The notes beneath the pieces were generated by a model. That model had not been told where the DNA came from, did not search any database, and saw only the letters and a list, made by a program, of their open reading frames with translations. Shown here piece by piece: positions 49,301 through 64,000 of a stretch of DNA of 64,000 nt (its first letter is position 1; the number at the start of each line of letters is the position of its first letter). A program made the position numbers and the translations under genes. The DNA lies in IMG/VR virus record IMGVR_UViG_3300043410_001892, positions 186,001 through 250,000 of that record; one strand, 5' to 3'.

Positions 49301-49464
49301 GTGTAAATGGTGATGTTGCAGAAGAAGATACTGTAGCAACTATTCCAACTACAATTGCTGAAATGGTAATCGGAGGCGCAGGCGCACAATATATCGAAAG
49401 AATTGCGTATTATCCACGTAGGTTAACTAACTTGGAAATTCGTTCACTCACATCAACTCTATAA
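37339..49464 (+). CDS. giant (4041 aa) baseplate/tail-fibre structural protein
   Basis: T4 gp9/gp10-like N-terminus (GNDGTGDSIREAFSKVNDNF); helical repeats; GGSGYTSAP repeats; C-terminal lectin-like domain (GLLIEEQRTN, WGAQLE..ATSYIPT); upstream GATAAATA. Confidence 0.8.
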   Translation: MAKKIIEIGVQGNDGTGDSIREAFSKVNDNFSEIYAVFKSEGKINFSDLSDGCTYISDQLITASHDGTTLIARDLVPGNGIFISATSSAITIEAQAASLSNDLKPEISAPFNANKFAIGRLSDPSEDLVDLFNLVYDIPTTLDELPVTVGYANRRYAQLTESGVIGVLENGVIVPSPIQTRAEPTTPDITNPLYDPTLTGNYLSTEVLPRKDVVYRGGDKMTGALILNDHPGAMAGTVGAMFDSDLQAATAFYVDNKTFTSNVNLYVSAASGDDLQLRTPAGKEGRYWNYAFKSIGAALLHAESLINLASQEPGPYKQRISYTLGADQTFSTVQRVRLTGGESTTPGYVAAFNLLQANRSFIQSETISYINKKYVNKFSYNKTLFSNRIEFLIKAVCDDLLLGATDPDTSVPGTNYRSIRSAVKYLHDDPYLEQSIQWLSAIEFIRNQIIEFTYDGPALQDYTTQLVTALCYDLIFSSNYQSIQAGIAFKNAGTKVSAEQLGSMLTIKPINILSVTVNGGVVTLNFLTQSSAFLLNSEILIDAVFTNVDDETNEIIIKPSETVNNVTTITSVTIDSASTVSSVSFRKGGYPFINDGTYTVTGSFDRKNLINLLLLTPGITTYPSSAVDITANATIVRDIVLTGTIPEPVMPTPNNPPAGYNVLGHVHAKSLLLDNISFIQAEVVAYLSSEFPDVSYNRELCLRDVKYIIWSLAYDLTYGGNSQSVYAGKKYWNNSTNFIIASEKTACVSVINYINTLAQAVIINSATTTTYQQSVRQYRNDTLTNGNVASASIASNVATIAAIVTSLSNVPAIINPSVTTGLAEMQTIFDRITADIGNYTDDTKSTSTIWYLDSYFPVIKTLTDKDKINNLFDQIISIVSGGVYPSVVPVYPIVTIPTPVNVNVTDAWIVQATGLLDQTAINTIAQSTNSYIASVYTTITYNSTTLQNDIKDLLFAAIYDLKYGGTLASFDVATTFTLLGSNVNTQKTIVQAAIDHAWSLTNTLLVGNITGDTSNHTVNKLREKFTFASSYFSNNPPIQGDDITVSLFSTTTYDNATKLRTLILNSLSTISNDTLTYIDSVFKGGFTYDESLCYRDLGLIIDAMSIDLITGGTYQSINAGKSFYKNSSARAVSIGTQYTQSFDGIMFAQSVALQVLNKQLKNRYQLLPQITQFATTNPSNLTYISTGELPTDSIGVTGDRSLPVSQNAIDTFVANMLRLTDIIQYGISVAATPSFGSGIWNLLIDNGGRGYVDQGSPSNNDLFPAKVIVGVGTSSIAASNAYGSIVTYTYGSDISGAPLVLGDVDTLQVRLTKPGFFKSAYTLVDLNWSFVGTTVTVTKANHTITQGTRIIVNFAQFFGSGSNAPIGTWIVSAVTTNTFSFVTSLAPIGTSTLMTVTVQVGEQIEFGETVRDLQLTMFIESGIYYEDYPLRVSSNISIKGDEFRRTIIRPKDRISQSPWRKIFFYRDAIVDALEVGLIDYTGTNYAPSGITASLDGVTNKIVVTLSGNFQAPLSWVGKVFADTNTTNGNAKRGKAVVDSVSGNTINCTVIYPFSVSGLYAAGSWKLFGTINYGRHYLTNPLDVTSTAKNNKDIDVLLCNEGTRIVGVTFQGHGGFAMVLDPEGNIKTKSPYIQECASFTQSNNYKRFAGGQYIDGFAGRLYGNIIGVSNDGITVTVQGETNSGLDIRPPQPPCSFYVRGKRYQIDDIVSFDATTATVVLTLDKTTPYLHTTSGVLTYDDVKAKRDIGYVLDAIASDAALGTTYRSVHAGRSFLKIYSSRLVGDLQDLTIAGINKALELSNTTLSGSTYSSIRTQYATNIAIITSMISNGVNATPTIVWSTSSTADDNLARNIIQNNKAFIKSEISAYIAQYFTLGDYPRYNVLTSERDVGYVLDAMTYDMFYGGDSQTKDSAEAFFYNNTSYIPDENVICSAAYTRLKAVLAAVVAGSPVVVSSGNSVSQILTNPPASSAGYVTKLNTLSDIVIDYIADGSYSSPRTSARTYPLLPVGTTGTTAYNLFFDTGTNPATKTTAETTIETSVSTFLKNGANLRINIEAGGNRSMLGNDFAMFNDLAYGILATNGAFTEQVCTFTYYAHTGLWANNGSNLRGVGCSNTFGNYGMRASGYDVTELPDSTNLANHMIQTARVYKQGIVANEMIPTATVPAIAVWIIGYDYIPTNGSIMEINHSVNSGTINSYTVTSAEYTTIQFANQTVLKLNLNTTDTGSGSGLSKELYDGQMVSIRSLKNVKFNNVDNVKPTRPSTALQYVDNLNDVYRIIAYNLTESTGDMLGDNIAILQSDNSFAYYNFTTDPKSIIIGDPDSSIYTTVALNGGATTSTSLTVTSATGILQGHIISGVGFTGQIITNINGNVLTLSSAPNATPYGTVYFSFKTQGSKVGDTKIAVDQVSQLRIIDQINKGTYITAWNGRLHRVLRYVTPTFAVSKTYASYNSGTSTMVVTGSAGSITAGMLVIKRNATTEALEFTGTVVSATVVGLTTEVVISTPNQVVTPLTQGPVTFGVTANGYIELSPNAFINNAANGVSVNAMTYLSSDFQVDSITAKVVTFDIPFSKDNLLPKVDSYLTFAGNSNASYNGEYQITRVINQTLVTLSTITDFVVGMVVTSQVTTQFITNSGGVSTFTSTANHNMVLNDPVTVNVSSNMNGLVQSTTYYVKTIPTSTSFTLSATSGGTALGNFGIVVSAGVVIISIATNLGVSTFTTNTSHGLVSGNTFAPNISTNSFVAGTTYYVKDVTSNTFTLSATSGGLALGNFGTTNVISSSVSFKTPQTAIIPGGSAIIQSVSSDPLVKTIVISPAAWVPANSPIRASLAASVMSISITSGGSGYTSAPSLTIEGGSPTQRATATCTIVNGEINEVRVIIKGSGYVSIPSVTVTPAVGNIPTSTAVLSVNLSTAVLRDATSTTGVSTIQMSALYPTDPGTFGTVTSITVSAETTTTTTYNSVSGYSMAYTVSSGSTKPANDTWCKVEGNSNALYNGFFQVISTASTTITLFSPLNPGIYGTGTTTITSTPTNGTSTSLGISKPFSTKDGYTFNIGYAANTFAQVTTRISTCRATGHDFCDIGTGGYSTTNIPYSIYGEPALSRQVSHETLDESVGRCFYVSTNQDGIFRVGKFFSVDQGTGVVTLSSKTALSNIEAFGFSGGGAVVNEFSTDSTLTDNSSNKVPVESAVRGYIDKRLGIDHGGSPLPFLSIIGPGFVPLNGSAKMTGDLVLGGNGITGVRSPISSSDVVTKGYLEQSLLAHNSLNELDDVTLTTPSNGQSIFYDSVSAKWRNAVFSGDVSVLVRPSTTLDNVIVSRGTASGIDSEFTCDANVGLFVGQQVTFSGTYSGSGLINGYTNPSTYFIIATNGTTTFQLSTVKGGVAVTATAGTLGLTVTVPLMSIAIGSGRIVNSMISSAAKIDQSKLSLNLAGTSTTTGGTLGVASFSSYQFSVDANGWVTLANSSSETTGTTLTKLQHVPAKTVLSNLTDGSTNVVANSASEVVRVGEGIQLGSFTSVGVMTVTSVLNSKPTGFAVVGITTTGEGSKIVKTGTSGGIDVAELLIDGYSVLDVDATPVGGAASAIVQFKTPGNYTFLTATGNNTVNNPSVISVAGTLDVTGTNSSIKCSSLSTGSTGTEGTLTGAWKLASGSSLDFSAGFVTSSSAGLTSSDLNTITRPALILDFANSKTLDPRISFTRNSIGTYTNAQGLLVTASVHQARFDFNPTTGVSKGLLIEEQRTNVLCGSASFAISGGTNQWVDSSISRGVGSTSPAGTATITFTASAGNATIISNAVASGTSYRTFSIWLKREAGTGDIQYTLNNGATWTTQAITSTLTRYSWSASVTNASVGIRIVTSGNSITMWGAQLEDGAFATSYIPTTTAAVIRRADVAIVNGTNFSRWYRQAEGTFVLTHAALGIDAVANSYNGVKVQSTDLTASMEIRCGSTGTGLLYDVKGLTNTGTTQFDFIGYSTLTVNTPVMQAFGYKANDCAYSVNGDVAEEDTVATIPTTIAEMVIGGAGAQYIERIAYYPRRLTNLEIRSLTSTL

Positions 49465-49474
49465 GGAATAAACA

Positions 49475-51526
49475 ATGAGTAGTTTTATAGGTAATAAACC
49501 AAATCAAGTACCAACAAATGGTGATCTGGGAAGATTAGCATTTATGGATTTTATAGGCATGGAGGACATTGGGTCCTCCATCCCAACTATTGTATCTGCA
49601 TCTAACATTTATCCACAAGTAAAGATATCTTATGTTAGTGGAACTGTTACAATTGATACAATAACTCCTCCTCAGGATTTAATAAATGGTGGACAAATAA
49701 CGTTAATACCAACTGGAGTATTTGCATTAAGCACTTCTGGAAATATTGCACTTGCAATCAACTCTGAAATTTCAAAAGCAATTATTTTGACATATGATTC
49801 AGTTGTTGCAAAATGGTATCCAAGTTATACTAATACAGTTAATAATTTAACACTAAATGGTACTGCAAATTCTACTATTACACTTGGAACAGGTGGTACC
49901 GTTGCATACACAAAAGATAAATTATCAGTATTTGCGCAAACAACTGCATCAGAATTTGCCAGTGTTATTTCAGATGGATCAACCGGTTCCGGTAAAATAG
50001 TATTGGCAACAAGTCCAACATTAGTAACACCTGTATTAGGTGCTGCAACTGCAACTTCGATTAATAAAATTGCACTTACTGCAGTGGCTACTGGATCTAC
50101 AATTACACTTGCAGATCAAAAAACATTAACCGTAAATAACACCGTAACACTTACTGGTACTGATGCATCAACCATTACATTTGGGACAGGCGGTACCGTT
50201 ACTTATACATCTAATAAATTATCAGTATTTGCTGCAACAACTTCATCTGAATTAGCTGGTGTTATTTCAGATGAAACTGGATCTGGTTTATTAGTGTTTA
50301 ATACAAGTCCAACATTAGTAACACCTGCATTAGGTGCTGCAACTGCAACTTCAATTAATAAAATTGCACTTACTGCGGTAGCTACTGGGTCTACAATTAC
50401 ACTTGCAGATCAAAAAACATTAACTGTAAATAATACAGTAACACTTACTGGTACTGATGCATCAACCATTACATTTGGGACAGGCGGTACAGTTGCATAT
50501 ACATCTAATAAATTATCAGTATTTGCTGCAACAAGCTCATCTGAATTAGCCGGTGTTATTTCAGATGAAACTGGATTTAGTACAACTGGTTTACTGATGT
50601 TTAATAACAATCCAACAGTAGTTACTGGAATAGTTGCTGATGCAGCATCAACTACATTTAATTTAATCAATACTGTTTCAACAACGGTAAATGCATTTGG
50701 TGCAGCAACAACATTAAATGTTGGATATACTGGTACAGGTGTAGCATCAACTACAAATATTTCAACAGGAGCATTAGCTGGATCATTTATTAAAACAGTT
50801 AACTTAGGAACCGGCGCTGCTTCTGGATCAACTACTAATATTAATATTGGTTCAAATATTGCCGGAACTACAGCAATTAATAGTCCAACTATTTCTACAT
50901 TAAGTGCTACTCTTGATTTATTTACAACAACTGTTGGAACTGTTAATTTTGGTAGTGTAGCCACTACTATGGGTATAGGATATACTGGTACTGCAGCATC
51001 TACACTTAATATTTCAACAGGCGCAGTTACAACTGGTACAACAAAAACAATCAATATAGGAACAGGTGGAGCTGCAAGTTCTACTACAACTATGAATATT
51101 GGAACAAGTGCAGGCGCATCTAATGTAACAATTGGGTCAACTGTATCTGGTACAACTACTGTTAATTACAATTTAGATGTATTGCAGAACATTACAGCTC
51201 GTCAAAATGTTACAGCATATTTTAGTTCTGATAGAAGATTAAAAGAAAACATCACACCTATTGAAAACCCATTAGATAAGTTGTTAACATTATCAGGAAA
51301 TACATTTAAGTGGTCTGATGAATACTATGCAACACAAAATCAAGAAATGGTTAAACAATATGATGTTGGGGTTATTGCTCAAGAAGTATTAGAAGTATTG
51401 CCAGAAGCAGTACATGAGCGTGATTCTGGAATGTTAGCAGTTGATTATACAAAATTAATACCATTATTAATTGAATGTATTAAGGCTCAACAAAAACAGA
51501 TTGATAATTTATTAGCAAAGGAGTAA
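49475..51526 (+). CDS. tail fibre with a C-terminal intramolecular chaperone (peptidase S74)
   Basis: SSDRRLKENI, GVIAQEV..VLPEAV, VDYTKLIPLLIECIK. Confidence 0.88.
   Translation: MSSFIGNKPNQVPTNGDLGRLAFMDFIGMEDIGSSIPTIVSASNIYPQVKISYVSGTVTIDTITPPQDLINGGQITLIPTGVFALSTSGNIALAINSEISKAIILTYDSVVAKWYPSYTNTVNNLTLNGTANSTITLGTGGTVAYTKDKLSVFAQTTASEFASVISDGSTGSGKIVLATSPTLVTPVLGAATATSINKIALTAVATGSTITLADQKTLTVNNTVTLTGTDASTITFGTGGTVTYTSNKLSVFAATTSSELAGVISDETGSGLLVFNTSPTLVTPALGAATATSINKIALTAVATGSTITLADQKTLTVNNTVTLTGTDASTITFGTGGTVAYTSNKLSVFAATSSSELAGVISDETGFSTTGLLMFNNNPTVVTGIVADAASTTFNLINTVSTTVNAFGAATTLNVGYTGTGVASTTNISTGALAGSFIKTVNLGTGAASGSTTNINIGSNIAGTTAINSPTISTLSATLDLFTTTVGTVNFGSVATTMGIGYTGTAASTLNISTGAVTTGTTKTINIGTGGAASSTTTMNIGTSAGASNVTIGSTVSGTTTVNYNLDVLQNITARQNVTAYFSSDRRLKENITPIENPLDKLLTLSGNTFKWSDEYYATQNQEMVKQYDVGVIAQEVLEVLPEAVHERDSGMLAVDYTKLIPLLIECIKAQQKQIDNLLAKE
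49850..50575 (+). repeat. 294-bp tandem duplication (two near-identical copies plus a diverged partial copy)
   Basis: acaagtccaacattagtaacacctg at 50009 and 50303; copies end at tcagatgaaactgga. Confidence 0.9.
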
Positions 51527-51529
51527 TAC

Positions 51530-54500
51530 ATGACACTACCATTAAGCAATAATGCTATATCAATGGGACAAGTTAACACTGAATTAAACTTAGCAGCCAA
51601 TGCACAAATATCATTAAATGATCCTGCAGTTCGTACATTACTTGCAAAAACAGGTGATAAGACAACCATTTCGTTAGCAGACGGTTGGGGTAAATCTAAC
51701 ATTGGAGCTGTAACAAATCTTGCAGTTACAAATGGATCAGTTACTGTTATGTCAGCTACTGTTACATGGACTACACCTGCAACAGGAACTATAACAAAAT
51801 ATGAAATTTATGCAAAAGATGCAAATAATGTAGTTAAAGGTTTAATAACAATTAATGCACCATTTTCTCCAATACCAACATCTGCAACAGTAACTGGTAT
51901 GGCGTCAAATACTGCATATACCATTTATGTTACTACGTCAAACACATCGTCAAGTGCAACTGCAAGTGCAACTGTTCCGGTAACAACATTAGCATACAAC
52001 TTCCCATTTACTACAGTTTCCAATGTAAATCCAAATACAGTTACATCATCAACTGTGGTTTCAGTTGGTGGATTACCAGTAAATCAAATTGTTACAGTTT
52101 CGGTCTCAGGTAGTGCTGGCGCACAATTTGCTGCAGCAAGCACACAAGCTGGTGCAACTTCATTTACGTCAACTTCTGGATTATACACAGCATCATCAAG
52201 TGGTATATTATATGTTGCTGCTCGAGTCACTTCAGGAACATTTTTAGCTGATGCAACTGCAACTGTTACAGTTGGTGATGGCAGTAGTACATTCACTGCA
52301 ACTACACGAGCAGCTGATATATCTCCATCAAACACAGTGCCAATTATAATTCCAGCAAAAATAGATGTTCCTATCAATTCAGCAGTAACGTCAGAACAGT
52401 TTACAATTACTGGATTAGAACCAAATTATACTGGATTAGTAATTAGTGCATCGGCTGGCGCAACATTTGTTGCAGGTCCAACTAGTGGATCGTTACCGTC
52501 AGTTTATGTAAATTCTGGGACATTTACAGTTGGCGCAGACACTAACATTTATATTAAAGCAAGAGTAACATCGAGCTCATTATTTGGAGCTGATGTAACT
52601 GGAACTTATACTATTGGATCAGGTACAGCCACATTTAAAGCTACAACAACTTCAAATGCATTTACTATTCCTGCAAAAACTGGACAGGCAATTAATACAT
52701 TAATTACTTCAGATTCAATACTTGTTACTGGTCTTGAATATTCTACAAGTTATCAAGTATCAGTTGCAAATGGGTCTGGTTCTACAGGTGCAGCTTATGA
52801 AGCAGTTACTGGTACAGGTACGTTAACAGGAACATTTACATCATCTACTACATCAGTAACATCATCTGCTGTAGGTGAAATAAGAGTACAAGTAAGAGTT
52901 CAATCAAGTACACAAGGTTCTACAACAACTAGTGCTACATTATCAATTGGATCTTATAAGTCAGGTACATTTAGTGTAACAACACCAGTTCCTGATACAA
53001 GTCCAACATTTGGATCAACTTTTGCAGCTATTACAAACGTTCCGTTAGGTTCGTTAATTTTAGCAGCAGAATCTCCAATAACAGTAACCAGTTTAGAACC
53101 AAATTATAATATTCCAGTTAGTGTTACTGGTGGGTATTATTATATATCATCATCAACATTTACACCAGGTAATGTAACATTTATTAATACCGACTCAACA
53201 GTTACAACACCGACCGGTACATTGTATCTTGGTCTTAAAGCATCTGCTAACTCGTCTTCGTTTTTAACTGATTCGACTGCAACTGTAACTATAGGTTCGG
53301 GATCAACTTCGTTTAAAGTTACAACTACAACAGGAACATTTTCATTTACAACAGCTTCAAATCTTAATATAAGCACATCTTCAACTTCAAATGTTATAGC
53401 AGTAAATGGTTTACCATATCCGGGTACTGTTACAGTTAGTATACCAAACGCTGATGCTAAAGTTGATGCAGGTACAACAACATCAATGAGCGGAACATAT
53501 GAGTTTATTAAGAGTAATGTTTCTACTGTACAAGACGGAACTGGCGGTAAGGTTTATTTAGCAATCCGAGGAACATCGAGTGATTTATTCTCAACTACCG
53601 TTACATATACTGCCAGCATAGCATACACGCAAGGAACAAAATCTGGTACTTATAGTATTGGAACAAGAGCAGCAGTTACACAACCATCGACTCAATTTAC
53701 ATTTACAGATTTAACTGGACAGGCAAGATCTTCAACAATTACATCTAGTCAGATTTCAATTACTGTAGAACCTAATTATACTCACACTATCACTGCTACT
53801 ACAAATACTGGTACAACTGTAGGAGTTGATGCAGGTACAACTACATCAATGAGTGGTTCTTATGGTACATCAAAATCAGTAACAACTGATGGAACTGGTG
53901 TAATTTATATAACGGCATCGGTACAAACAGGTACTGCATATTCGACTGCATATAATTGTACAATAACCGTTGGCACAATGTCTGATACTTTTACAGCAAC
54001 AACTCTTGTACAGATTATTATTCCAGGATCAATCACATTGGGATTTAGTGGCACTACATCAAGTTCAACTACAATGACTATTTCAGCTGGAAGCGGAAGT
54101 GCACCTGATTCATATTATTATGAAAGATACACAGATGCTGCATATACTGCTAATAAGTTTACTGGAACAAGTCAAAGTTCAAATAGTTTTTCAGTTAGCT
54201 TACCAAGTTCAAACACTACTTATTATATTAAAGGTTTTGCAACTAATACTGCAGGAACAGGTTCAGGAACAGGTTCAGTTACATCAGCTGCAGCAGCACC
54301 AACAAGTGCTTCGATAGCATTTTCGTCAATTGCTGAAACATCTGCAACATTAACTGTTACATCGACTGGTGCAACAACATGGGGTTATCAGCAATATACT
54401 GATGCAAATTATAATGTAGCAGTCGGAAGTACTGTATCAAGTAATGCTACAAATAGTTTTGGGTTGTCAAGTTTAACAGGTGCAACTTATTATTATTTTA

Positions 54501-56896
54501 AAGGGTATGGTTCAAATACTGGTGGATCATCACCGTATTCAGCAGGACAATCAGTTTTAACAGTTCCTGGGTCAGTATCGGTGACTGCATCAACTCCAGT
54601 TTGGAATGCAGCTAGTTCAGTTTACACTTATACTATTAGTCTTTCGTATACCGGAACGGTTTCATCGTGGATAGCATATAGAGGACAAAATCCAAATTTA
54701 ACTGCACCAACCGCACTTGGTACTGGAATTTTACCAAGTTCGTCATTTTCTGCAACATCAGCTGTAAGTACAACTACATATTATTCAGGAAAGGCAACTA
54801 ATGCATCTGGAACATCTGCGTCATATGGGCCAACTATATCAGTAACAGTTGGAGCTGCTCCAATTACTGCACCATCTAGTGCATCAATTGCATCTTCGTC
54901 AATTACTGAAACTACGTTAACATTGACTATTACATCTACTAATGCTACAACTTGGGGTTATCAAGAATATACTAACTCAAATTATAACGTAGCAGTTGGA
55001 AATGCTGTATCAAGTACGTCTACAAATAGCTTTGGTGTAACAGGTCGTACTGGTGGTTCTACATATTATTATGCAGGTTTTGGTTCAAATGCATCGGGAA
55101 CATCGCCGTATTCTACAGGAATATCAGTATTAATGAAACCAAGTACACCAACATTAACAGTTAGTAGTACACCATCCTGGAATGCAACTACATCAAAATA
55201 TGATTATAGTACAACTTATTCTGGAGGTGGAACAACAGTTTCTAGTTATAAATTGTATCAAGGAACTTCAACAAGTGATTCTAATCCTACATTGTTAGGA
55301 TCTAGTATTGTTGCGGTAGGTGTGACAGCTTCTACTAGCATGTACCTTAGGGCAACTGCAGTTAACACTTCAGGTGAGTCTAGTGCAACTGGGTATGCTA
55401 CTATAACTGCACCAGCAGCACCAATAACACCAGCAGCTCCAACAATAACGTTTACAGCAGGAACTGGTACAGGAGTTACAGTAACTATTTCAAGTACAAA
55501 TGCAACCGCATACAAATATAGTTACGCAACAACTACACCGTCATCTGCATCAACTGATAGCAATGGCACTGTTACAATAGCTAATGGTACACTGTCAACT
55601 AACACAACGTATTATTTCGTTGCAATTGCAATAAGAACTGCAGGTGGTGTAACTACACAATCAGCACTATCAAGTGCATATTCATATGCAACACCAGCAC
55701 CGGCAGTTGGTACTGCATCTATTACTATATCTGATGTAGGTATAAGAAGTATTAAAGGAACAGTTTCTGCAACCAATGCAACTTACTACTATACACAAAA
55801 TTACGATCCATATGCAGTCGGTGTTTGGCCAACTCCAAGATATAGACCATCAAGTTCATCACAATGGACCACTAGTACTGCATTTTCTCAAAACATACCT
55901 AGCGGACAAGCTATGTATGTATTAGCAATTAATTATAAATCTGGGTTTAATCCATATTCATCGACTGACGGATGGACAGGTGTAAATTCATTTTCAGAAG
56001 GATATTCGTCTGGAACTGTTACACTAGTAGCATCTACTGGAACATACAATTCTCCTTCAACATCTACTGCGTCATTAGCAATACCATGGGATGTTGTTAA
56101 AATTAGAATCAGTGCAACCGGCGGCGGCGGTGGAGGCGGTGGTGCTAACTCAGTTAATAATGACGGTACTGGAGGTGCAGGTGGTGGATCACCGACATTG
56201 GCTGCAACATTTAATAAACCATCAGGCCAAACACACTTACTGATTTCAGTAGGCGGTGGCGGATACAGTGGTAACGGCGGTGGTTATACAAGTGGAAGTG
56301 GCACTGGCGGTAATGGTGGTATTGGTATATCTGGATATGCAGGTGGTGCAGGTGGCACTAAAGGCGGCACTGGAGTTTCAGGTGGTGGCGGTGGCGGTGG
56401 CGGCGCTTCTGTAGTTTCTACATACCCTAATAGCTATACATTAATAGTAGTAGGCGGTGGCGGTGGCGGACTCGGTGGTACATATCAATATAAAAGCAAC
56501 ATACCAATCGGTGGTGTAGTAACATCGTATTCGGGTAAAACTGACTATTCGGGAATGGTTAATGGTACTGCCGGTGCAACACCAATTGCAACCGTTAACG
56601 GTGGTGGCGGTGGCGGTGGCGCCGGACCAGGCGGAGCAGGTGGGGTTGCTGGTAAAGACAGTGTAAATCTACCCGGAATAGGCGGTGCAAGTGCAGTATA
56701 TTATAACAGTACTTATTATGTCGGGTCTGGTGCAACTTGGACTGCAGCACCTACTGCACTTGTAACATCAACGTCTACTGATGCACCAGGTACCGGTGGT
56801 AAAGGTGGAACTTCATTTAGTAATACTAATTATATTGCAGCTGATTCATGGGCTGGATCTGCCGGACAGGTAACTTATACATTCTATGATGTATAA
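51530..56896 (+). CDS. Ser/Thr-rich tail fibre/adhesin with Ig/FN3-like repeats and a glycine-rich C-terminal domain
   Basis: N-terminal AISMGQVNTEL; repeated beta modules; GGGGGG tracts. Confidence 0.75.
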   Translation: MTLPLSNNAISMGQVNTELNLAANAQISLNDPAVRTLLAKTGDKTTISLADGWGKSNIGAVTNLAVTNGSVTVMSATVTWTTPATGTITKYEIYAKDANNVVKGLITINAPFSPIPTSATVTGMASNTAYTIYVTTSNTSSSATASATVPVTTLAYNFPFTTVSNVNPNTVTSSTVVSVGGLPVNQIVTVSVSGSAGAQFAAASTQAGATSFTSTSGLYTASSSGILYVAARVTSGTFLADATATVTVGDGSSTFTATTRAADISPSNTVPIIIPAKIDVPINSAVTSEQFTITGLEPNYTGLVISASAGATFVAGPTSGSLPSVYVNSGTFTVGADTNIYIKARVTSSSLFGADVTGTYTIGSGTATFKATTTSNAFTIPAKTGQAINTLITSDSILVTGLEYSTSYQVSVANGSGSTGAAYEAVTGTGTLTGTFTSSTTSVTSSAVGEIRVQVRVQSSTQGSTTTSATLSIGSYKSGTFSVTTPVPDTSPTFGSTFAAITNVPLGSLILAAESPITVTSLEPNYNIPVSVTGGYYYISSSTFTPGNVTFINTDSTVTTPTGTLYLGLKASANSSSFLTDSTATVTIGSGSTSFKVTTTTGTFSFTTASNLNISTSSTSNVIAVNGLPYPGTVTVSIPNADAKVDAGTTTSMSGTYEFIKSNVSTVQDGTGGKVYLAIRGTSSDLFSTTVTYTASIAYTQGTKSGTYSIGTRAAVTQPSTQFTFTDLTGQARSSTITSSQISITVEPNYTHTITATTNTGTTVGVDAGTTTSMSGSYGTSKSVTTDGTGVIYITASVQTGTAYSTAYNCTITVGTMSDTFTATTLVQIIIPGSITLGFSGTTSSSTTMTISAGSGSAPDSYYYERYTDAAYTANKFTGTSQSSNSFSVSLPSSNTTYYIKGFATNTAGTGSGTGSVTSAAAAPTSASIAFSSIAETSATLTVTSTGATTWGYQQYTDANYNVAVGSTVSSNATNSFGLSSLTGATYYYFKGYGSNTGGSSPYSAGQSVLTVPGSVSVTASTPVWNAASSVYTYTISLSYTGTVSSWIAYRGQNPNLTAPTALGTGILPSSSFSATSAVSTTTYYSGKATNASGTSASYGPTISVTVGAAPITAPSSASIASSSITETTLTLTITSTNATTWGYQEYTNSNYNVAVGNAVSSTSTNSFGVTGRTGGSTYYYAGFGSNASGTSPYSTGISVLMKPSTPTLTVSSTPSWNATTSKYDYSTTYSGGGTTVSSYKLYQGTSTSDSNPTLLGSSIVAVGVTASTSMYLRATAVNTSGESSATGYATITAPAAPITPAAPTITFTAGTGTGVTVTISSTNATAYKYSYATTTPSSASTDSNGTVTIANGTLSTNTTYYFVAIAIRTAGGVTTQSALSSAYSYATPAPAVGTASITISDVGIRSIKGTVSATNATYYYTQNYDPYAVGVWPTPRYRPSSSSQWTTSTAFSQNIPSGQAMYVLAINYKSGFNPYSSTDGWTGVNSFSEGYSSGTVTLVASTGTYNSPSTSTASLAIPWDVVKIRISATGGGGGGGGANSVNNDGTGGAGGGSPTLAATFNKPSGQTHLLISVGGGGYSGNGGGYTSGSGTGGNGGIGISGYAGGAGGTKGGTGVSGGGGGGGGASVVSTYPNSYTLIVVGGGGGGLGGTYQYKSNIPIGGVVTSYSGKTDYSGMVNGTAGATPIATVNGGGGGGGAGPGGAGGVAGKDSVNLPGIGGASAVYYNSTYYVGSGATWTAAPTALVTSTSTDAPGTGGKGGTSFSNTNYIAADSWAGSAGQVTYTFYDV

Positions 56897-59506: not shown

Positions 59507-59693
59507 TTTTAATGTCTTTGGTTAGGGTTGGTGTAACACATCCGACCGGTTTAGGTCGGATGTATGGTTCTTTTATAAACTCTACGTGGCAATCCACGCA
59601 TATAAACATATCCCTAGATGTTATAATTAACATCCCAGCGCCGCAACGCGGACACTGGTTTCCTGTTACTTCTTCATATGACTGTGTAGTCAT
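59499..59693 (-). CDS. small zinc-ribbon protein
   Basis: CPRCG...CVDC; ATGA overlap with the ligase. Confidence 0.55.
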   Translation of the reverse strand: MTTQSYEEVTGNQCPRCGAGMLIITSRDMFICVDCHVEFIKEPYIRPKPVGCVTPTLTKDIKNE

Positions 59694-61048
59694 TTAGTCT
59701 TTCCCATTGCGCTATCAAACTGATCCTGTATTCGTTGCAACGAATCAGCTTCTGATTTATCTTTGCGGAACTCTACAAATCTTGGCAAAAATAAACTGTA
59801 ATATTGGTTGCTTGATGTAGGTGGCATAATGTTATTAGATTTAATTGTTACAATAGTTCCATATAACTCGTCTTTACGAGTAAAGATATCTTTACGTAAA
59901 TCATCTGAGAAACCAGAAGCATTTACTTCTAACAATTCATCTGAAGAGCGACAAGTAATTGAACCAAACAGTTTTTCGTTTTTACCTTTGCCTTCTGTAA
60001 ATCCTACAATTTCTAAATCAACATCTACTTCAAGTTTAAGTTTAACTTGGTCTTTGCTTGTACCATCACGCCATTTAGCATCTGGACGTTTAATAATAGT
60101 ACCTTCAAGACCTTGTTCTACTAACTCAAGGTAATGTTTAAATGCTTCTTCCCATGAAAACACTAACTTAGTTTCAATCATTTTAACATATTGATAATCA
60201 GTTACTGCTTGTGATGCTACTCGATTTTTTAATTTATGGTATCGATCCCTATACTCTTCAGAGCCTTTACCTTTTGGTACAGCTTCAGATAACGGAATTT
60301 GATCCCATACTAAAAATAATGGCCATTCATTTTCAGCAAACGATCCGCCGTCTGAAACACTGTTTAAAATACCATTGCCAATTTCACGTGGTAACACAAC
60401 TCCGTCACGACATACAACAAGTTCGCCATGTGTTTGTGTATTACATTCCATTTTACGTTGCATGTAATCAACAATGCCTTTAAATTGGTCTAACGGCATT
60501 GGATTACCACTTCTGCTTAATAATTCAATAGACAAGTCTTCATAGAAGTTAGCATTGATATACATGCCGTCTGCTTTTAACTGTGAATACACACCTTTAG
60601 ACCATGGCCAAGTATCAAGTTTAACATGTTTAGGTAATGAGCAACGTTGATATGGAAACTCTGGAATTAAACCCTTCCACACTTTATTTACTGTGGCTGC
60701 TTGAACACCACAGCGCAAGTCTTTATTTACAATTTTGATAACAACCTGTGCATCTTGTGCTGATACTGATTCTAAAATATTTTTAAGATGATCAATGCCT
60801 GCGTGACCTGTATAAGTACGGTCAGCTAGTGCATGTAAGTGGACAATAGCTTCGTCAAGCTGCATTTTTGCAAGTCCTGTGTTAGGAGTAAACTCAGGAA
60901 TTTTTTTGATATTAAACGGTAGTAATTTATTATTAGCACAGTAGCAAATGTCTTTCAACAACTTGTTAGTGCTGTTCTGTTTGAGGATAGCTAATTTAGC
61001 GTTAGTTTTAGGTTCATTAGCTAACTGCTCTAAAATTGTAGAGATCAT
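59690..61048 (-). CDS. ATP-dependent DNA ligase (gp30-like)
   Basis: QLKADG, GELV, VWD, EGTIIK, VKLK, LFLPRF..FRKDK; AGGAG RBS before MISTILE. Confidence 0.93.
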   Translation of the reverse strand: MISTILEQLANEPKTNAKLAILKQNSTNKLLKDICYCANNKLLPFNIKKIPEFTPNTGLAKMQLDEAIVHLHALADRTYTGHAGIDHLKNILESVSAQDAQVVIKIVNKDLRCGVQAATVNKVWKGLIPEFPYQRCSLPKHVKLDTWPWSKGVYSQLKADGMYINANFYEDLSIELLSRSGNPMPLDQFKGIVDYMQRKMECNTQTHGELVVCRDGVVLPREIGNGILNSVSDGGSFAENEWPLFLVWDQIPLSEAVPKGKGSEEYRDRYHKLKNRVASQAVTDYQYVKMIETKLVFSWEEAFKHYLELVEQGLEGTIIKRPDAKWRDGTSKDQVKLKLEVDVDLEIVGFTEGKGKNEKLFGSITCRSSDELLEVNASGFSDDLRKDIFTRKDELYGTIVTIKSNNIMPPTSSNQYYSLFLPRFVEFRKDKSEADSLQRIQDQFDSAMGKTK

Positions 61049-61077
61049 ATACACTCCTGTTTAATTAAAAAAAATAT

Positions 61078-61106
61078 ATTATACAGCAATTAGCTAATGT
61101 TGTCAA
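61078..61106 (-). promoter_or_regulatory. consensus sigma70-type promoter for the ligase operon
   Basis: TTGACA-N17-TATAAT. Confidence 0.8.
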
Positions 61107-61261: not shown

Positions 61262-61930
61262 TTAGTCTTTGGAACTAAGGATGTTTAATAAACTTAAAAA
61301 TAAGTTGATAAAATCCAAATACAAGTTCAATGCACATAACAGTTCGGTATTAGTGTTTGCGCTATATCTGAGCATTTCTTGAGTTTTCTGAACATCGTAT
61401 GCAGTAAAGCCCATAAACACAATAATAGTAATGCCACTAATAACTAAACTGAATACTGAACTCATAACAAAGATATTAATCAGCCCAGCAAAAATCAATG
61501 CAATTAAACCAACCATTAAAAAGTCACCCCATGATGACAAATCTCGTCGTGTATAAGCACCATATACTGCCATAGAACCAAATAGCACTGCTGCACTGGA
61601 CAATGCAGTAGCAACTGATTCAAACGAAGCCATTGCTATTGCTGGCCCCATCATAACACCAATCATCGATGAAACGATTAAAAATCCAACATAACCAACG
61701 ACTGAACTAGCATCATCGTTAGTTAAAAACCAAGCTAATAACATTATTGCAGGTAATGGTGCAAATATTGAAACCCAAAGCATAGGGCCGGTGTATAAGA
61801 AATGCATTAGTGCAGGACTGGCATAGACTGCTGCAACTGTCAAAAATGACGTTAAGATTGATAAGAACACATTTTTATATACACGCACCATTGGTGTATA
61901 TACAAGTTCTTTTTGTAAAGCTGATAACAT
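61262..61930 (-). CDS. Bax inhibitor-1/YccA family membrane protein
   Basis: 7 TM helices; TRRDLS..G.FL, FTAYDVQK, ALNLYLDFINLF; GGAG RBS before MLSALQ. Confidence 0.9.
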   Translation of the reverse strand: MLSALQKELVYTPMVRVYKNVFLSILTSFLTVAAVYASPALMHFLYTGPMLWVSIFAPLPAIMLLAWFLTNDDASSVVGYVGFLIVSSMIGVMMGPAIAMASFESVATALSSAAVLFGSMAVYGAYTRRDLSSWGDFLMVGLIALIFAGLINIFVMSSVFSLVISGITIIVFMGFTAYDVQKTQEMLRYSANTNTELLCALNLYLDFINLFLSLLNILSSKD

Positions 61931-61931
61931 A

Positions 61932-62216
61932 TTATTCTCCTTTATATTTAGGTTGTTGACCTGCACTTGCCATAATAATTTCTTTATTAGGTCCGCAGGA
62001 ATAAAATTCTACTTCGTAAAGATCTCTCGCGTGACCTAAGTATGTACACCCAAGAGGTTTTGAAATTGCTCGTCTTTGATCAGTGTATTTTACAGTATTA
62101 AATGTTAATCCTCCAACTACTGCTAACCCAACCATTACAACTGTTACTAATGCGGATTGAAATATCAGTCCGCCTAATACTCCTAAGAAAATTATTAGTA
62201 TCATTGTTAAAATCAT
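61932..62216 (-). CDS. small membrane protein
   Basis: two N-terminal hydrophobic helices. Confidence 0.55.
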   Translation of the reverse strand: MILTMILIIFLGVLGGLIFQSALVTVVMVGLAVVGGLTFNTVKYTDQRRAISKPLGCTYLGHARDLYEVEFYSCGPNKEIIMASAGQQPKYKGE

Positions 62217-63241
62217 TCTGTAACTCCTTTAGAATTGTGATAATTATATAGTTCAAATGAAGCAAGGTTTTTGCCTTTGCTTTCTGCCATTATGTCAAAG
62301 TTATCTAAAAAGCTCAATGCCCAGTCATTGACTGCAACATTCCAGTAAAAGTTAGAATGAGCTCGAAGTTTTTGTTTATTTAATCCAGATTCAAGCAATA
62401 GTTGAAGTTCTGGCAAAGTTTGTTTGTTATGGGTTGGTAGCACATCTTCCCTACTAATAGAATAATGCATAGTGGGGCGACGACCACGCCAGCTATCAAT
62501 AACCCTTTGTACGCGCTCATCGTCCGGCTGTATGTATTCGCCTGTTTTAATAAAGTGATGGTGTATATCCAAAACCACAGGTACTCTACTAGCAAGGGTA
62601 AGGCAGTCATCAAGTCCAAAAGAAATCTCCTCATTTTCTACAGTAATACAATTTTTAGCAACATCGCTTAATCTTTCGTAAGCGTCTAAGAAACCTTGTG
62701 GACCACGTTTACCTGCAATATGCACATTGATTTTCATATCCTGAAATTCCTTGCCATATCCCATCCAACGTGCCATGTCTGCATGATATTCAAATTCTTC
62801 AATACTGCGTTCAACTACGTCATCTCGATCAGATGCTAGTACACAAAACTGACCTGGGTGGAAACTAAGTTTAATATCATTCGTTTTTGCAATTTCGCCA
62901 ACACGAGCAAACTCACGCGCAATATAAGCAATCACATCAGGTTTTTTGTAAAAGTAAGAATAGTTTTCGTGTGTGTAAACAGGAAGTATATCGCTACTAA
63001 TACGTAACATACGTAATGGTTGTGGAAGTGTAGAAACTTTGAGTACTAATTTACGAGTAGCTTCAATATTTTGTTTTATTAGTTCCCACAGTTTTTTCTC
63101 AGCATTAGCTGGGAGTTGTCTGCCAAGCCAAGCAACTGTAGTAGTGCCTGTGTTATATTTTTTACAATCGTCAGTTGATTTAATTCCGTCAACTTGATGC
63201 GGAAAATCAATAAACTTGCAAGCAAAGCCTATTCTGTACAT
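62213..63241 (-). CDS. uvsE: UV damage endonuclease (UvsE/UVDE)
   Basis: RIGFAC, LRISSD, SFHPGQF, NVH, TVENEE, VLDIHHH, HYS, AHS, MAESKGK. Confidence 0.92.
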   Translation of the reverse strand: MYRIGFACKFIDFPHQVDGIKSTDDCKKYNTGTTTVAWLGRQLPANAEKKLWELIKQNIEATRKLVLKVSTLPQPLRMLRISSDILPVYTHENYSYFYKKPDVIAYIAREFARVGEIAKTNDIKLSFHPGQFCVLASDRDDVVERSIEEFEYHADMARWMGYGKEFQDMKINVHIAGKRGPQGFLDAYERLSDVAKNCITVENEEISFGLDDCLTLASRVPVVLDIHHHFIKTGEYIQPDDERVQRVIDSWRGRRPTMHYSISREDVLPTHNKQTLPELQLLLESGLNKQKLRAHSNFYWNVAVNDWALSFLDNFDIMAESKGKNLASFELYNYHNSKGVTE

Positions 63242-63294: not shown

Positions 63295-63534
63295 TTAAGC
63301 AACGTTGTGTACTGGTTCACTAAATTTTAATGCAAACCATGCAAACTTTTCATCGGAATTAAATTGAACGTATTGTTCGTTGTCACCGTCAAATACAATG
63401 TGTGCATCGTATTCTGCTAATGCTTCTTGTGCAATACGTCTAACGCCGTCTTTGTCGTTGTCAAGAATATGTTGACGAACTGTTGCCATGTACCAGTTGT
63501 CGTGAAGTTTTGTATCAAATTCTAATTTATGCAT
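63295..63534 (-). CDS. small hypothetical protein
   Basis: GAGG RBS before MHKLEF; C-terminal FAWFALKF motif. Confidence 0.6.
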   Translation of the reverse strand: MHKLEFDTKLHDNWYMATVRQHILDNDKDGVRRIAQEALAEYDAHIVFDGDNEQYVQFNSDEKFAWFALKFSEPVHNVA

Positions 63535-63569
63535 AGTAAACACCTCATGTAAGTAATTAAAAAAAATAT

Positions 63570-63598
63570 ATTATACAATAATAATAAAACAATTGCAA
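63570..63598 (-). promoter_or_regulatory. sigma70-type promoter
   Basis: TTGCAA-N17-TATAAT. Confidence 0.65.
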
Positions 63599-63612: not shown

Positions 63613-63640
63613 AAAAAGAAAGGAGCCTAAGCTCCTTTCT
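63613..63640 (-). terminator. intrinsic terminator directly after pmoC
   Basis: AGAAAGGAGC-TTAG-GCTCCTTTCTTTTT. Confidence 0.85.
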
Positions 63641-63658
63641 GTATGTACAACTTAGATA

Positions 63659-64000
63659 CTACGCTAAGTTGGATTTAAGTAATTTTGAAATAGCTTGTAC
63701 TTCAATATTTACCACACCTAATACACCTAAAGCAGCCCATCCAAAGAATACAAACCCGTAGTGTAATGGTGCTACGAATAGTTCTTCCATGAACCAGAAA
63801 GTGTGTCCCCATTCGTTTAATCCAACGTTTGGAAGAATCATAAATGGCCCGATTACAGATACCATGTATTGTAATGGTAAGCCTTTTTGGTAGGTAGGCA
63901 AGCGTGTTTTAGCATATAAGAATGCTGCGACACCTGTGATGATGTAGATAGGATAACTTAGATAAAACTCAATAACATGACTTGGTGTAAAATCAGTATC
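63659..64000 (-). CDS. pmoC: particulate methane monooxygenase subunit C (5' part lies outside the window)
   Basis: Frame is open to the window edge: DTDFTPSHVIEFYLSYPIYIITG...KTRLP...GPFMILPNVGLNEWGHTFWFMEELFVAPLHYGFVFFGW. Confidence 0.97.
   Translation of the reverse strand, partial: DTDFTPSHVIEFYLSYPIYIITGVAAFLYAKTRLPTYQKGLPLQYMVSVIGPFMILPNVGLNEWGHTFWFMEELFVAPLHYGFVFFGWAALGVLGVVNIEVQAISKLLKSNLA

What the first reader, a model, noticed from the sequence alone, without database searches (positions are those of the whole stretch)
63613..64000. Phage-encoded stand-alone pmoC with intact copper ligands
Seen: PmoC C-terminal half with FTPSH (a CuC His) and N-EWG-H...APLH (CuD Asn/His/His), followed at once by a terminator and phage genes, with no pmoA/pmoB. 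EFYLSYPIYI and VAPLHYGF are the pmoC rather than amoC variants. Established: large freshwater pmoC-phages have been described. Inference: the host is a gammaproteobacterial methanotroph and this auxiliary gene sustains methane oxidation during infection.
Basis: partly seen in the sequence, partly recalled or inferred. Interest (0 to 1): 0.75.

Follow-up and report, generated by a model that had tools for sequence, protein, structure and literature searches.

The report
Phage-carried methane monooxygenase pmoC gene
A complete 372-kb freshwater jumbo phage carries its own intact, well-conserved copy of pmoC, the copper-binding core subunit of its methanotroph host's methane-oxidising enzyme; the gene is real, but phages of this kind were first described in 2020.

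Summary
Window 63659-64000 (- strand) is the last 113 codons of a 250-codon pmoC. The rest lies just past the window end, in a 372,173-bp IMG/VR phage record with 83-bp terminal repeats. All six copper ligands are present. 165 of 169 columns invariant in 80 bacterial PmoCs are kept. The genome has no pmoA or pmoB.

It is not a chimera. GC is phage-like, and the gene is only about 82% identical in DNA to any bacterial pmoC. Contigs from an independent study bridge both junctions.

dN/dS against sister phage copies is 0.03-0.05 with dS 0.5-2, so the protein is under selection in phages. Its PmoC sits in an all-phage clade nested among freshwater Methylococcaceae pmoCAB operons.

This is a new member of the pmoC-phages of Chen et al. 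2020, so interest is modest. Function and host remain inferred: I found no transcript evidence and no CRISPR link.

The more novel result is in sister phages. Their "fragmented" pmoC genes are split by small ORF-less group I introns at seven sites, six of them in the stretch that encodes the CuD helix. Removing the introns restores full-length PmoC. The window's gene is the intron-free allele.

The parts
63659..64000 (-). 3' part of pmoC: codons 138-250 and the stop codon. The full gene is genome 249659-250411 (would-be window 63659-64411), 250 aa.
   Evidence: ORF; Pfam AmoC E 3.7e-59; full gene; colinear with solved PmoC 6cxh_C over residues 1-250, E 2.3e-153
63977..63979 (-). His145 codon, equivalent to His173 of M. 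capsulatus Bath PmoC (CuC ligand). The other two CuC ligands, Asp128 and His132, lie just outside the window.
   Evidence: Numbering offset of +28 from the alignment to 1yew_C; positions; ligand identities from PMC12576850
63761..63817 (-). CuD ligand codons: Asn199 (63815-63817), His203 (63803-63805), His217 (63761-63763), equivalent to Bath Asn227, His231, His245.
63737..63808 (-). Codons Gly202-Trp225 (CuD helix). In sister phages this stretch holds six of the seven group I intron insertion sites. All are unoccupied here.
   Evidence: Intron sites; no intron of this family in the window or its genome
63617..63640 (-). Intrinsic-terminator-like hairpin (10-bp stem, 4-nt loop, T run) 18 nt after the pmoC stop codon.
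   Evidence: L001 2141-2118; window = L001 + 61499; sequence
63554..63577 (-). 24-nt exact repeat that includes the -10 element of a sigma-70-like promoter (TTGCAA, 17 nt, TATAAT) for the 82-aa ORF. Its twin is at 61062-61085.
63295..63543 (-). 82-aa ORF of unknown function, first gene of a 4-gene module absent from sister phages.
   Evidence: no family match; synteny
62213..63241 (-). UvdE-type UV damage endonuclease.
   Evidence: Pfam PF03851 E 2.3e-41; phrog_8420 E 1.2e-85
61262..61966 (-). Bax inhibitor-1 / YccA-family membrane protein, last gene of the 4-gene module.
   Evidence: Pfam PF01027 E 7.2e-45
61062..61085 (-). Second copy of the 24-nt repeat, in the promoter of the DNA ligase gene. 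The two copies bracket the module orf82-UvdE-orf94-Bax1-I.
59690..61054 (-). ATP-dependent DNA ligase. In sister phages it lies directly after the ClpP/lipoprotein/pmoC slot.
   Evidence: Pfam; synteny

Best explanation
This is a full-length, functional pmoC carried as an auxiliary metabolic gene by a complete 372-kb T4-capsid-type jumbo phage of a freshwater Methylococcaceae methanotroph.

Shown:
- The gene is its own transcription unit: promoter-like sites, a conserved 5'-UTR hairpin, a ribosome-binding site and a terminator.
- It keeps nearly all residues that are invariant in host PmoCs.
- It has been kept under strong purifying selection while diverging for a long time inside phage genomes.
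- It sits in a variable slot between ClpP and DNA ligase that is empty in some sister phages.

Inferred:
- During infection the phage makes PmoC.
- The host membrane-insertion machinery places it in the intracytoplasmic membrane.
- It assembles with host PmoA and PmoB into pMMO protomers, replacing a subunit that becomes limiting when host expression stops.
- This keeps methane oxidation, and with it energy and reductant supply, running while a 372-kb genome is replicated and packaged.

The logic is the same as for cyanophage psbA.
For: Identity:
- Pfam AmoC E 3.7e-59 on the window part and 404 bits on the whole gene.
- End-to-end alignment with solved PmoC chains, E 2.3e-153.
- All six ligands present: Asp128, His132, His145 and Asn199, His203, His217 match Bath 156/160/173 and 227/231/245.
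- 165 of 169 columns invariant in 80 bacterial PmoCs are kept. The four changes are at residues 2, 11, 16 and 248, in the termini.

Phage origin:
- IMG/VR record with terminal repeats and CheckV completeness 100.
- Gp23 capsid E 9e-96; DNA polymerase and tail fibres in the window.
- Capsid 66-70% identical to jumbo myoviruses such as PA5oct.

Stand-alone: no pmoA or pmoB in the genome, nor in 80 viral pmoC loci. 74 of 80 bacterial loci have pmoA just downstream.

Not chimeric:
- pmoC GC is 38.9% against 35.5% for the genome.
- DNA identity to any bacterial pmoC is at most about 82%.
- A second contig is 100% identical over 12.75 kb.
- Single contigs from the source sample and from an independent study bridge both junctions.

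Selection: dN/dS 0.027-0.053 against eight phage copies, with dS 0.5-2.1.

Expression signals:
- TTGACT, 16 nt, TATAAT, matching 11 of 12 positions.
- A TATAAATA element of a motif class found upstream of 64 genes, conserved in sister phages.
- AGGAG ribosome-binding site and terminator.

Host: the PmoC lies in an 11-member all-phage clade (support 98/81) nested among freshwater Methylococcaceae pmoCAB PmoCs, best match 92%.

Precedent: Chen et al. 2020 found phage pmoC co-expressed with late structural genes.
Against: - No transcript or protein evidence for this phage. One RNA library held only a 232-nt contig on uvdE. No public RNA run held more than 10% of the gene's sampled words.
- No direct host link. 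A limited CRISPR-type search (20 kb of phage against 301 genomes of the candidate host family) gave only chance matches in coding DNA.
- dS above 1 to every bacterial copy means the donor lineage need not be today's host.
- Close relatives of this phage lack pmoC altogether, so the gene is dispensable for the lineage.
- Assembly with host PmoA and PmoB, and any effect on methane flux, are untested anywhere.
- A terminator-like hairpin lies between the promoter-like sites and the ribosome-binding site. It could limit expression.
Confidence: 0.65

Rival explanations
1. The phage PmoC does not raise bulk methane oxidation. It acts like the extra monocistronic pmoC/amoC copies of methanotrophs and ammonia oxidisers: a condition-specific or stress-recovery subunit, an assembly or regulatory factor, or a variant that changes metal or substrate handling of pMMO.
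For: [quoted passage not shown] Chen et al. point to the same region as the likely basis of condition-dependent behaviour of different copies. Candidate host genomes also carry extra pmoC copies (G001 three matches, G004 two). The gene is monocistronic with its own promoter and leader.
Against: Nothing in the sequence separates this from simple subunit replacement. The catalytic core and all ligands match operon-encoded PmoC. In the tree it groups with operon copies that have pmoA downstream.
Confidence: 0.2
2. The phage PmoC is used against the host or against competitors. It could poison or re-route pMMO, alter intracytoplasmic membranes, or exclude superinfecting phages, rather than sustain metabolism.
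For: No positive evidence. The reading is allowed only because function is untested and because phage abundance is followed by host collapse in time series (Chen et al.).
Against: A dominant-negative protein would not need all six copper ligands, nor 165 of 169 host-invariant residues, kept at dN/dS of about 0.03.
Confidence: 0.05
3. pmoC is a neutral passenger picked up from a host and on its way to decay.
For: Sister phages lack it. It sits in a variable slot bounded by repeated promoter sequences. Published and database copies were described as fragmented.
Against: dN/dS is 0.027-0.053 at dS 0.5-2.1 among phage copies. The frame is intact with all ligands. The 'fragments' are intron-split genes that regain full length when the introns are removed.
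Confidence: 0.03
4. The pmoC end of the window is an assembly chimera with a host contig or a mis-binned bacterial fragment.
For: Chen et al. note that assemblies often break at pmoC because bacterial and phage copies are similar. Contigs in the source run also break inside the gene, and depth rises there.
Against: Depth on the flanks and on pmoC is alike, about 134-139. Single contigs cross the 3' junction in three runs and the 5' junction in two runs of a different study. No bacterial pmoC is more than about 82% identical in DNA. The same ClpP-pmoC-ligase order is seen in several independent contigs. pmoA does not follow the gene.
Confidence: 0.01

Closest known systems
pmoC-phages of Chen et al. 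2020 (Nat Microbiol; PMC7674155), especially the 314-366 kb gamma-type genomes LM_4, LR_4, LR_5 and LR_6 with predicted Methylobacter hosts
   Same: Large freshwater phage with a T4-type capsid. Stand-alone pmoC without pmoA or pmoB. Copper ligands conserved. PmoC diverges from bacterial copies mainly at the N and C termini. PmoC groups with Methylococcaceae. Close relatives without pmoC exist.
   Different: No genome in their Table 1 has this length of 372,173 bp, so this is most likely a further member. Here the gene is unsplit and sits next to a 4-gene UvdE/Bax1-I module. I could not compare sequences directly: their genomes are not in the GenBank phage collection I searched, which has no PmoC match at all.
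Operon-encoded PmoC of Methylococcaceae pMMO: solved structures 6CXH/7S4L and M. capsulatus Bath 7S4H/7S4J; freshwater MAG pmoCAB operons L085-L091
   Same: Same length and end-to-end alignment. 92% identity to freshwater MAG copies and 86-87% to Methylotuvimicrobium. Identical CuC and CuD ligands. A hairpin plus U-rich tract just upstream of the ribosome-binding site, as in bacterial leaders.
   Different: Not followed by pmoA and pmoB. Phage promoters and phage-like codon usage (GC3 0.31 against 0.35-0.39). Phage-specific substitutions at residues 2, 11, 16 and 248.
Orphan monocistronic pmoC/amoC copies in methanotrophs and ammonia oxidisers, and virus-encoded amoC (Thaumarchaeota viruses; amoC-phages, bioRxiv 10.64898/2026.06.18.733297)
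   Same: Only the C subunit is duplicated or mobilised, as a single gene with its own regulation.
   Different: Those are cellular paralogues, or belong to ammonia oxidisers and their viruses. This copy groups with methanotroph PmoC.
Cyanophage psbA (photosystem II D1), including its group I intron and the adjacent free-standing homing endonuclease (Zeng et al. 2009, cited in PMC3984707)
   Same: A phage copy of the core subunit of the host's energy-harvesting membrane enzyme. In sister pmoC-phages the gene is likewise invaded by group I introns and flanked by a free-standing homing-endonuclease-like gene.
   Different: A different enzyme and host. The window's own gene has neither the intron nor the adjacent endonuclease. 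The pmoC introns occupy seven sites, up to four in one gene. I know of no such report for psbA (from memory).

Membership tests
PmoC/AmoC, gamma subunit of copper membrane monooxygenases (Pfam PF04896) | Domain match above the curated cut-off, over the full length | tested here: met
   200.5 bits on the window part (cut-off 26.7). 404 bits over profile positions 6-244 on the whole gene. Residues 1-250 align to residues 1-250 of 6cxh_C.
PmoC/AmoC, gamma subunit of copper membrane monooxygenases (Pfam PF04896) | CuC site ligands Asp156, His160, His173 (Bath numbering) | tested here: met
   Asp128, His132, His145; offset +28 from the 1yew_C alignment; ligand list from PMC12576850. Only His145 lies inside the window.
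PmoC/AmoC, gamma subunit of copper membrane monooxygenases (Pfam PF04896) | CuD site ligands Asn227, His231, His245 | tested here: met
   Asn199, His203, His217, all inside the window.
PmoC/AmoC, gamma subunit of copper membrane monooxygenases (Pfam PF04896) | PmoC of gammaproteobacterial methanotrophs rather than AmoC | tested here: met
   Solved PmoC E 2e-153 against solved AmoC E 1e-71. 92% identity to Methylococcaceae copies that have pmoA and pmoB downstream. Nested among them in the tree.
PmoC/AmoC, gamma subunit of copper membrane monooxygenases (Pfam PF04896) | Assembles with PmoA and PmoB and supports methane oxidation | not testable with these tools
   Inferred from 165 of 169 host-invariant residues kept.
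pmoC-phage (Chen et al. 2020) | Phage genome with hallmark genes | tested here: met
   Virus record with terminal repeats, completeness 100. Gp23 capsid E 9e-96. DNA polymerase and tail fibres. Capsid 66-70% identical to jumbo myoviruses. Phage_sheath_1 (PF04984) gave no match, so the myovirus morphology is inferred from capsid relatives only.
pmoC-phage (Chen et al. 2020) | Stand-alone pmoC: no pmoA or pmoB anywhere in a complete genome | tested here: met
   The PF04744 search had no positive control, but tblastn with Methylobacter PmoA and PmoB found them in 71-74 of the 80 bacterial loci and not in the phage.
pmoC-phage (Chen et al. 2020) | Large genome (159-527 kb), GC 32-44%, freshwater origin | tested here: met
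   372,173 bp, GC 35.5%; 13 tRNAs. The runs that hold it are freshwater, aquatic and microbial-mat metagenomes.
pmoC-phage (Chen et al. 2020) | PmoC more than 90% similar to that of a coexisting methanotroph; abundances correlate | tested here: inconclusive
   92% identity to freshwater MAG PmoCs from other data sets. Coexistence and abundance in the source sample were not tested.
pmoC-phage (Chen et al. 2020) | pmoC transcribed in situ | tested here: inconclusive
   No pmoC signal in the one RNA library laid. No RNA run held more than 10% of the gene's words. This is absence of evidence only.
Auxiliary metabolic gene kept by selection | Purifying selection among viral copies; viral genes on both sides | tested here: met
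   dN/dS 0.027-0.053. ClpP upstream; orf82, UvdE and ligase downstream.
Group I intron (Rfam RF00028) | The window's pmoC or its genome contains such an intron | tested here: not met
   No match at gathering score in the window. The best match in the genome is 17.8 bits against a cut-off of 50, elsewhere in the genome. nhmmer with the intron family finds nothing in the genome.
Group I intron (Rfam RF00028) | The inserts in the pmoC of sister phages are group I introns: score, splice-site rule, covariation | tested here: met
   63.9-93.9 bits against a cut-off of 50. For every locus there is a splice solution that obeys the rule (exon ends in U, intron ends in G) and restores 250-262 aa PmoC. 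It was shown to be the unique top solution for the single-intron loci. The last base of L047 intron 1 is A where the others have G. 46 of 60 predicted pairs show compensatory changes across 11 copies. Splicing itself was not tested.

The most novel reading that the evidence does not exclude
In sister pmoC-phages one family of 242-258-nt ORF-less group I introns occupies seven different sites in pmoC. Six of them lie within about 70 nt, and up to four sit in one gene. A free-standing homing-endonuclease-like gene often lies next to pmoC. [quoted passage not shown] Related introns at many nearby sites in one protein-coding gene would also be unusually good circumstantial evidence for intron transposition to new sites, for example by reverse splicing.
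Probability: 0.7. Interest if true: 0.6.

Novelty: new member of a known kind. Interest (0 to 1): 0.3.

Why it matters
Aerobic methanotrophs are the main biological filter for methane leaving lakes. Phages that carry the catalytic-core subunit of pMMO could keep infected cells oxidising methane until lysis, or otherwise alter that flux.

This genome adds a complete, uninterrupted example under clear selection, useful as a reference allele. It has mapped regulatory signals and a defined insertion slot, and sister phages without the gene provide natural controls.

The side finding changes how the published 'fragmented' phage pmoC genes should be read: probably spliced and functional rather than broken. 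It also gives a directly testable system for group I intron mobility.

Tried and rejected
- **Chimeric assembly or host contamination:** rejected.
- **Truncated or frameshifted 5' half:** rejected. The gene continues intact beyond the window end.
- **CRISPR-spacer host link:** 20 kb of the window was searched against 301 genomes of the family of the nearest host-like MAG. It gave two exact 27-nt matches, but both lie in ordinary coding DNA with no repeat array. Only two candidates per genome were scored and only 5% of the phage was used, so this is a weak negative.
- **Transcript evidence:** one RNA library held only 232 nt of uvdE at depth 2. No RNA run held more than 10% of the pmoC words. 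No more reads could be laid, so intron splicing in the sister phages could not be checked in RNA.
- **GenBank phage collection:** no DNA match beyond clpP and no PmoC match at all. Direct comparison with the published pmoC-phage genomes was therefore not possible.
- **P1 guide-sequence test for the introns:** each intron pairs with its own 5' exon end over only 4 bp, and cross-controls reach 4 bp as well. This is consistent with group I introns but not discriminating.
- **Avoidance of U at intron sites in intron-free genes:** the window's gene has A at four of the seven sites, but there is no consistent pattern across intron-free phage genes. Dropped.
- **TATAAATA as a strict T4 late promoter:** the exact octamer is rare, with 25 copies and 7 genes. 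The looser class NATAAATA/NCTAAATA precedes 64 genes. Treated as a lead only.
- **Complex prediction with host PmoA and PmoB:** not run. At 92% identity to a host subunit a pass would not be informative.
- **Motif-by-motif pmoC versus amoC comparison:** not done, because no AmoC sequences were to hand.

Full report
**What is at the coordinates.** Window 63659-64000 on the - strand is an open frame of 113 codons that runs off the window end. It matches Pfam AmoC (PF04896) at E 3.7e-59, over profile positions 135-244 of 245. The window is bases 186001-250000 of a 372,173-bp IMG/VR virus record with terminal repeats and CheckV completeness 100. The repeat is 83 bp and the GC is 35.5%. Reading on in that record, the gene is complete: genome 249659-250411, 250 aa, an ATG eight bases after AGGAG. 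It aligns residue 1 to 250 with residues 1 to 250 of two solved PmoC chains, 6cxh_C and 7s4l_C, at E 2.3e-153.

**Copper ligands.** Using the +28 offset to the M. capsulatus Bath chain 1yew_C and the ligand lists in PMC12576850, all six ligands are present.
- CuC: Asp156, His160, His173 correspond to Asp128, His132, His145.
- CuD: Asn227, His231, His245 correspond to Asn199, His203, His217.

The window holds four of the six. Of 169 alignment columns that are invariant in 80 Methylococcaceae PmoCs, 165 are kept. The four changes are at residues 2, 11, 16 and 248, in the cytoplasmic termini. Chen et al. report the same pattern.

**It is a phage gene, alone, and not an artefact.**
- The record encodes a T4-type Gp23 capsid protein, E 9e-96. 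That protein is 66-70% identical to those of jumbo myoviruses such as Sinorhizobium phage Phosso, Vibrio phage 2.275.O and Pseudomonas phage PA5oct.
- The window itself holds a family-B DNA polymerase, an AAA+ protease and tail-fibre proteins.
- The record has 13 tRNAs and a tmRNA.
- pmoC occurs once.
- pmoA and pmoB are absent by Pfam search. They are also absent by tblastn with Methylobacter PmoA and PmoB. That tblastn search finds them just downstream of pmoC in 71-74 of 80 bacterial loci, and in none of 80 viral pmoC loci.
- pmoC has GC 38.9% and GC3 0.31. Phage genes have GC3 0.22 +/- 0.06, and the nearest bacterial pmoC genes 0.35-0.39.
- No bacterial pmoC is more than about 82% identical in DNA.
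- A 171-kb contig, L005, is 100% identical over 12.75 kb around the gene.
- In the source-sample run the depth is about 134-139 on the flanks and on pmoC. Single contigs cross the pmoC 3' junction in three runs, and the 5' junction in two runs from a different study.

The chimera hypothesis is rejected.

**Anatomy of the locus.** Read on the - strand, the order is as follows:
1. ClpP.
2. A 68-aa lipoprotein-like ORF.
3. A promoter-like site, TTGACT, 16 nt, TATAAT, matching 11 of 12 positions.
4. A TATAAATA element.
5. A hairpin with a U run.
6. The ribosome-binding site and pmoC.
7. A terminator hairpin at window 63617-63640.
8. orf82, UvdE, orf94, a Bax1-I/YccA-family protein, a 28-aa hydrophobic ORF and DNA ligase.

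The TATAAATA element belongs to a motif class (NATAAATA/NCTAAATA) that is enriched up to 8.5-fold upstream of genes and precedes 64 of about 500 genes. Both it and the leader hairpin are conserved in sister phages. The stem sequence differs between phages while still pairing (by eye from the alignment; not counted). Bacterial pmoC leaders have an analogous hairpin and U-rich tract before the ribosome-binding site. The motif resembles the T4 late promoter (from my own knowledge). It would fit the late co-expression that Chen et al. saw. That link is an inference.

**The slot is variable.** Phages whose ligase is 82-87% identical show the stretch between ClpP/lipoprotein and ligase in several states:
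- empty: L180, L183, L186;
- holding an unrelated 222-aa ORF: L177-L179, including a 372,016-bp contig;
- holding pmoC alone: L014, which is the same contig as L181;
- holding an intron-split pmoC: L175/L176, L184/L187;
- holding pmoC plus the four-gene UvdE module, as here.

That module is bracketed by an exact 24-nt repeat that covers the -10 region of two sigma-70-like promoters, at window 61062-61085 and 63554-63577. This suggests module gain by recombination between repeated promoter sequences.

**Selection and origin.** Against eight phage copies, dN/dS is 0.027-0.053 with dS 0.5-2.1. The protein has therefore been preserved through long divergence inside phages. In a careful maximum-likelihood tree of 115 PmoCs, the window's protein lies in an 11-member all-phage clade with support 98/81. 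With L011 the clade has 12 members and support 92/84. The clade nests among PmoCs of freshwater Methylococcaceae MAGs that have pmoCAB operons, with best identity 92%. Those MAGs are small, 2.1-2.8 Mb, and some carry extra pmoC copies. The virus/bacterium label changes at least three to four times within the gamma-type sequences alone. The label is therefore not a single clade, which suggests repeated transfers between hosts and phages. At least 117 IMG/VR contigs carry pmoC.

**How it most likely works.**
- Shown: an intact, independently regulated gene under strong selection, with every catalytic ligand and nearly every host-invariant residue.
- Inferred: the phage makes PmoC during infection. 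It is inserted into the intracytoplasmic membrane and joins host PmoA and PmoB. This keeps pMMO working when host gene expression has stopped, so that energy and reductant last until lysis.
- Main rival: it acts like the orphan pmoC/amoC copies, with a condition-specific or assembly role. The sequence data do not separate the two.
- Against any functional claim: there is no transcript evidence for this phage, no direct host link, and pmoC-less relatives exist.

**Comparison with what is known.** This is the pmoC-phage kind of Chen et al. 2020: 22 genomes of 159-527 kb, stand-alone pmoC, conserved Asp156/His160/His173, divergent termini, and pmoC-less relatives. No genome in their table has 372,173 bp. 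The GenBank phage collection has no PmoC match at all, so I could not test identity with a published genome. I file it as a new member of a known kind.

**Side finding: group I introns in sister phages.** The closest database proteins include 211-221-aa 'PmoCs' that end early. In the DNA, the coding sequence resumes about 250 nt later.
- The inserts match the Rfam group I intron model at 63.9-93.9 bits against a cut-off of 50.
- For every locus there is a splice solution that obeys the group I rule (exon ends in U, intron ends in G) and restores a 250-262-aa PmoC, including His217. It was shown to be the unique top solution for the single-intron loci.
- The introns are 242-258 nt, have no ORF, and form one family. 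Five of them are 80% identical on average, and eleven are 73% identical.
- Across the eleven copies, 46 of 60 predicted pairs show compensatory changes and few are broken.
- They occupy seven sites in the window's numbering: after Gly45, between Gly202 and His203, in Phe205, in Phe207, between Ala214 and Pro215, in Phe220, and between Gly224 and Trp225.
- L044 has two introns and L047 has four. L047 intron 1 has A where the others have the terminal G.
- A profile of the family hits only phage pmoC genes. It finds nothing in 80 bacterial loci and nothing in this phage's genome.
- The intron-bearing genes lie in at least four separate PmoC lineages and show dN/dS 0.035-0.053.
- Several of these loci, and three intron-free ones, carry a free-standing homing-endonuclease-like gene converging on pmoC: phrog_314 at E 1.7e-24 and 5.4e-12, with a weak SegE GIY-YIG match.

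[quoted passage not shown] Their text never uses the word intron. I found no paper that combines pmoC with group I intron. Related introns at different sites in one gene are regarded as the best circumstantial evidence for ectopic intron transposition (PMC3984707). Splicing itself is untested.

**Verdict.** The kind is already known, so interest in the finding itself is modest. The window's allele is a clean intron-free reference for a gene that is a target of mobile introns in its relatives.

Noticed in passing
L012/L013 6659-6916; L016/L017 and L022/L024 6615-6863; L025 6643-6893; L043 6130-6382; L044 6596-6844 and 6898-7149; L047 about 1540-1790, 1804-2052, 2076-2333, 2364-2612: The 'fragmented' pmoC genes of sister phages are split by one family of 242-258-nt ORF-less group I introns at seven sites. 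Rfam scores are 64-94 bits. 46 of 60 predicted pairs covary. Removing the introns restores full-length PmoC. This was not found in the searched literature.
   Followed up: yes
L175 6868-7752 (-); L184 7104-7757 (-); homologous C-terminal parts in L022/L024, L047, L018, L040, L045; a distant relative at genome 349213-349827: Free-standing homing-endonuclease-like genes (phrog_314; weak SegE GIY-YIG and NUMOD3 matches; repeated CxxC...HFxNC zinc-finger-like motifs) converge on the 3' end of pmoC in several phage lineages. This recalls the endonuclease next to cyanophage psbA. There is none next to pmoC in the window's phage.
   Followed up: partly
L177-L180, L183, L186 (ClpP to ligase interval); window 61062-61085 and 63554-63577: Close relatives of this phage lack pmoC at the same slot. 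One is a 372,016-bp contig. In the window's phage an extra four-gene module (orf82, UvdE, orf94, Bax1-I) is bracketed by an exact 24-nt repeat of a promoter -10 region, which suggests promoter-mediated module shuffling.
   Followed up: partly
genome 250443-250468 (L001 2944-2969, - strand), just outside the window; the same position in L006-L016; bacterial loci L085-L092 and L135 about 2960-2990: A hairpin followed by a U-rich tract lies 25-30 nt upstream of the pmoC start codon in phage and bacterial genes alike. The sequence differs but the layout is the same, and among phages the stem sequence differs while still pairing (by eye; not counted). It lies downstream of the promoter-like sites, so it may be a leader or stability element or an attenuator.
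   Followed up: partly
whole genome; e.g. upstream of genes at window 3351-4034, 18900-19268, 26553-27164 and 37339-49464: The motif NATAAATA/NCTAAATA is enriched up to 8.5-fold upstream of genes and precedes 64 genes, mostly 20-55 nt before the start codon. It is likely the late promoter of this phage group. The exact octamer TATAAATA is the rarest permutation of its own letters in the genome.
   Followed up: partly
window 19901-22180 (-) and genome 250731-251312 (-): The phage encodes a 759-aa AAA+ 'ATP-dependent protease' (phrog_4871, E 1e-245) and a ClpP-type peptidase. The ClpP gene lies directly upstream of the pmoC slot in several phage lineages.
   Followed up: no
window 61262-61966 (-): A Bax inhibitor-1/YccA-family membrane protein (PF01027, E 7e-45) lies 1.7 kb from pmoC. 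Homologues occur near pmoC in two other phage loci, L011 and L054. From memory, YccA-type proteins modulate FtsH. A link to membrane-protein quality control is speculation.
   Followed up: no
window 37339-49464 (+), 49475-51526 (+), 51530-56896 (+): A 4041-aa ORF is followed by a tail-fibre-like 683-aa protein and a 1788-aa protein with no family match. These are presumably giant virion or fibre proteins.
   Followed up: no
genome 273620-274041 (-) and 258894-264290; L025 1-229: ARAGORN finds a permuted tmRNA gene in this phage, and a cluster of 11 tRNAs lies 9-14 kb beyond pmoC. Another pmoC-phage contig, L025, also has a tmRNA match (54 bits, below Rfam's gathering score).
   Followed up: no
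L011 and L040 (ClpP, ligase-like gene, pmoC): Two phage contigs share the same gene order around pmoC, yet their PmoCs fall in different, well-supported clades of the tree. This hints at replacement of the pmoC allele at a fixed locus.
   Followed up: no
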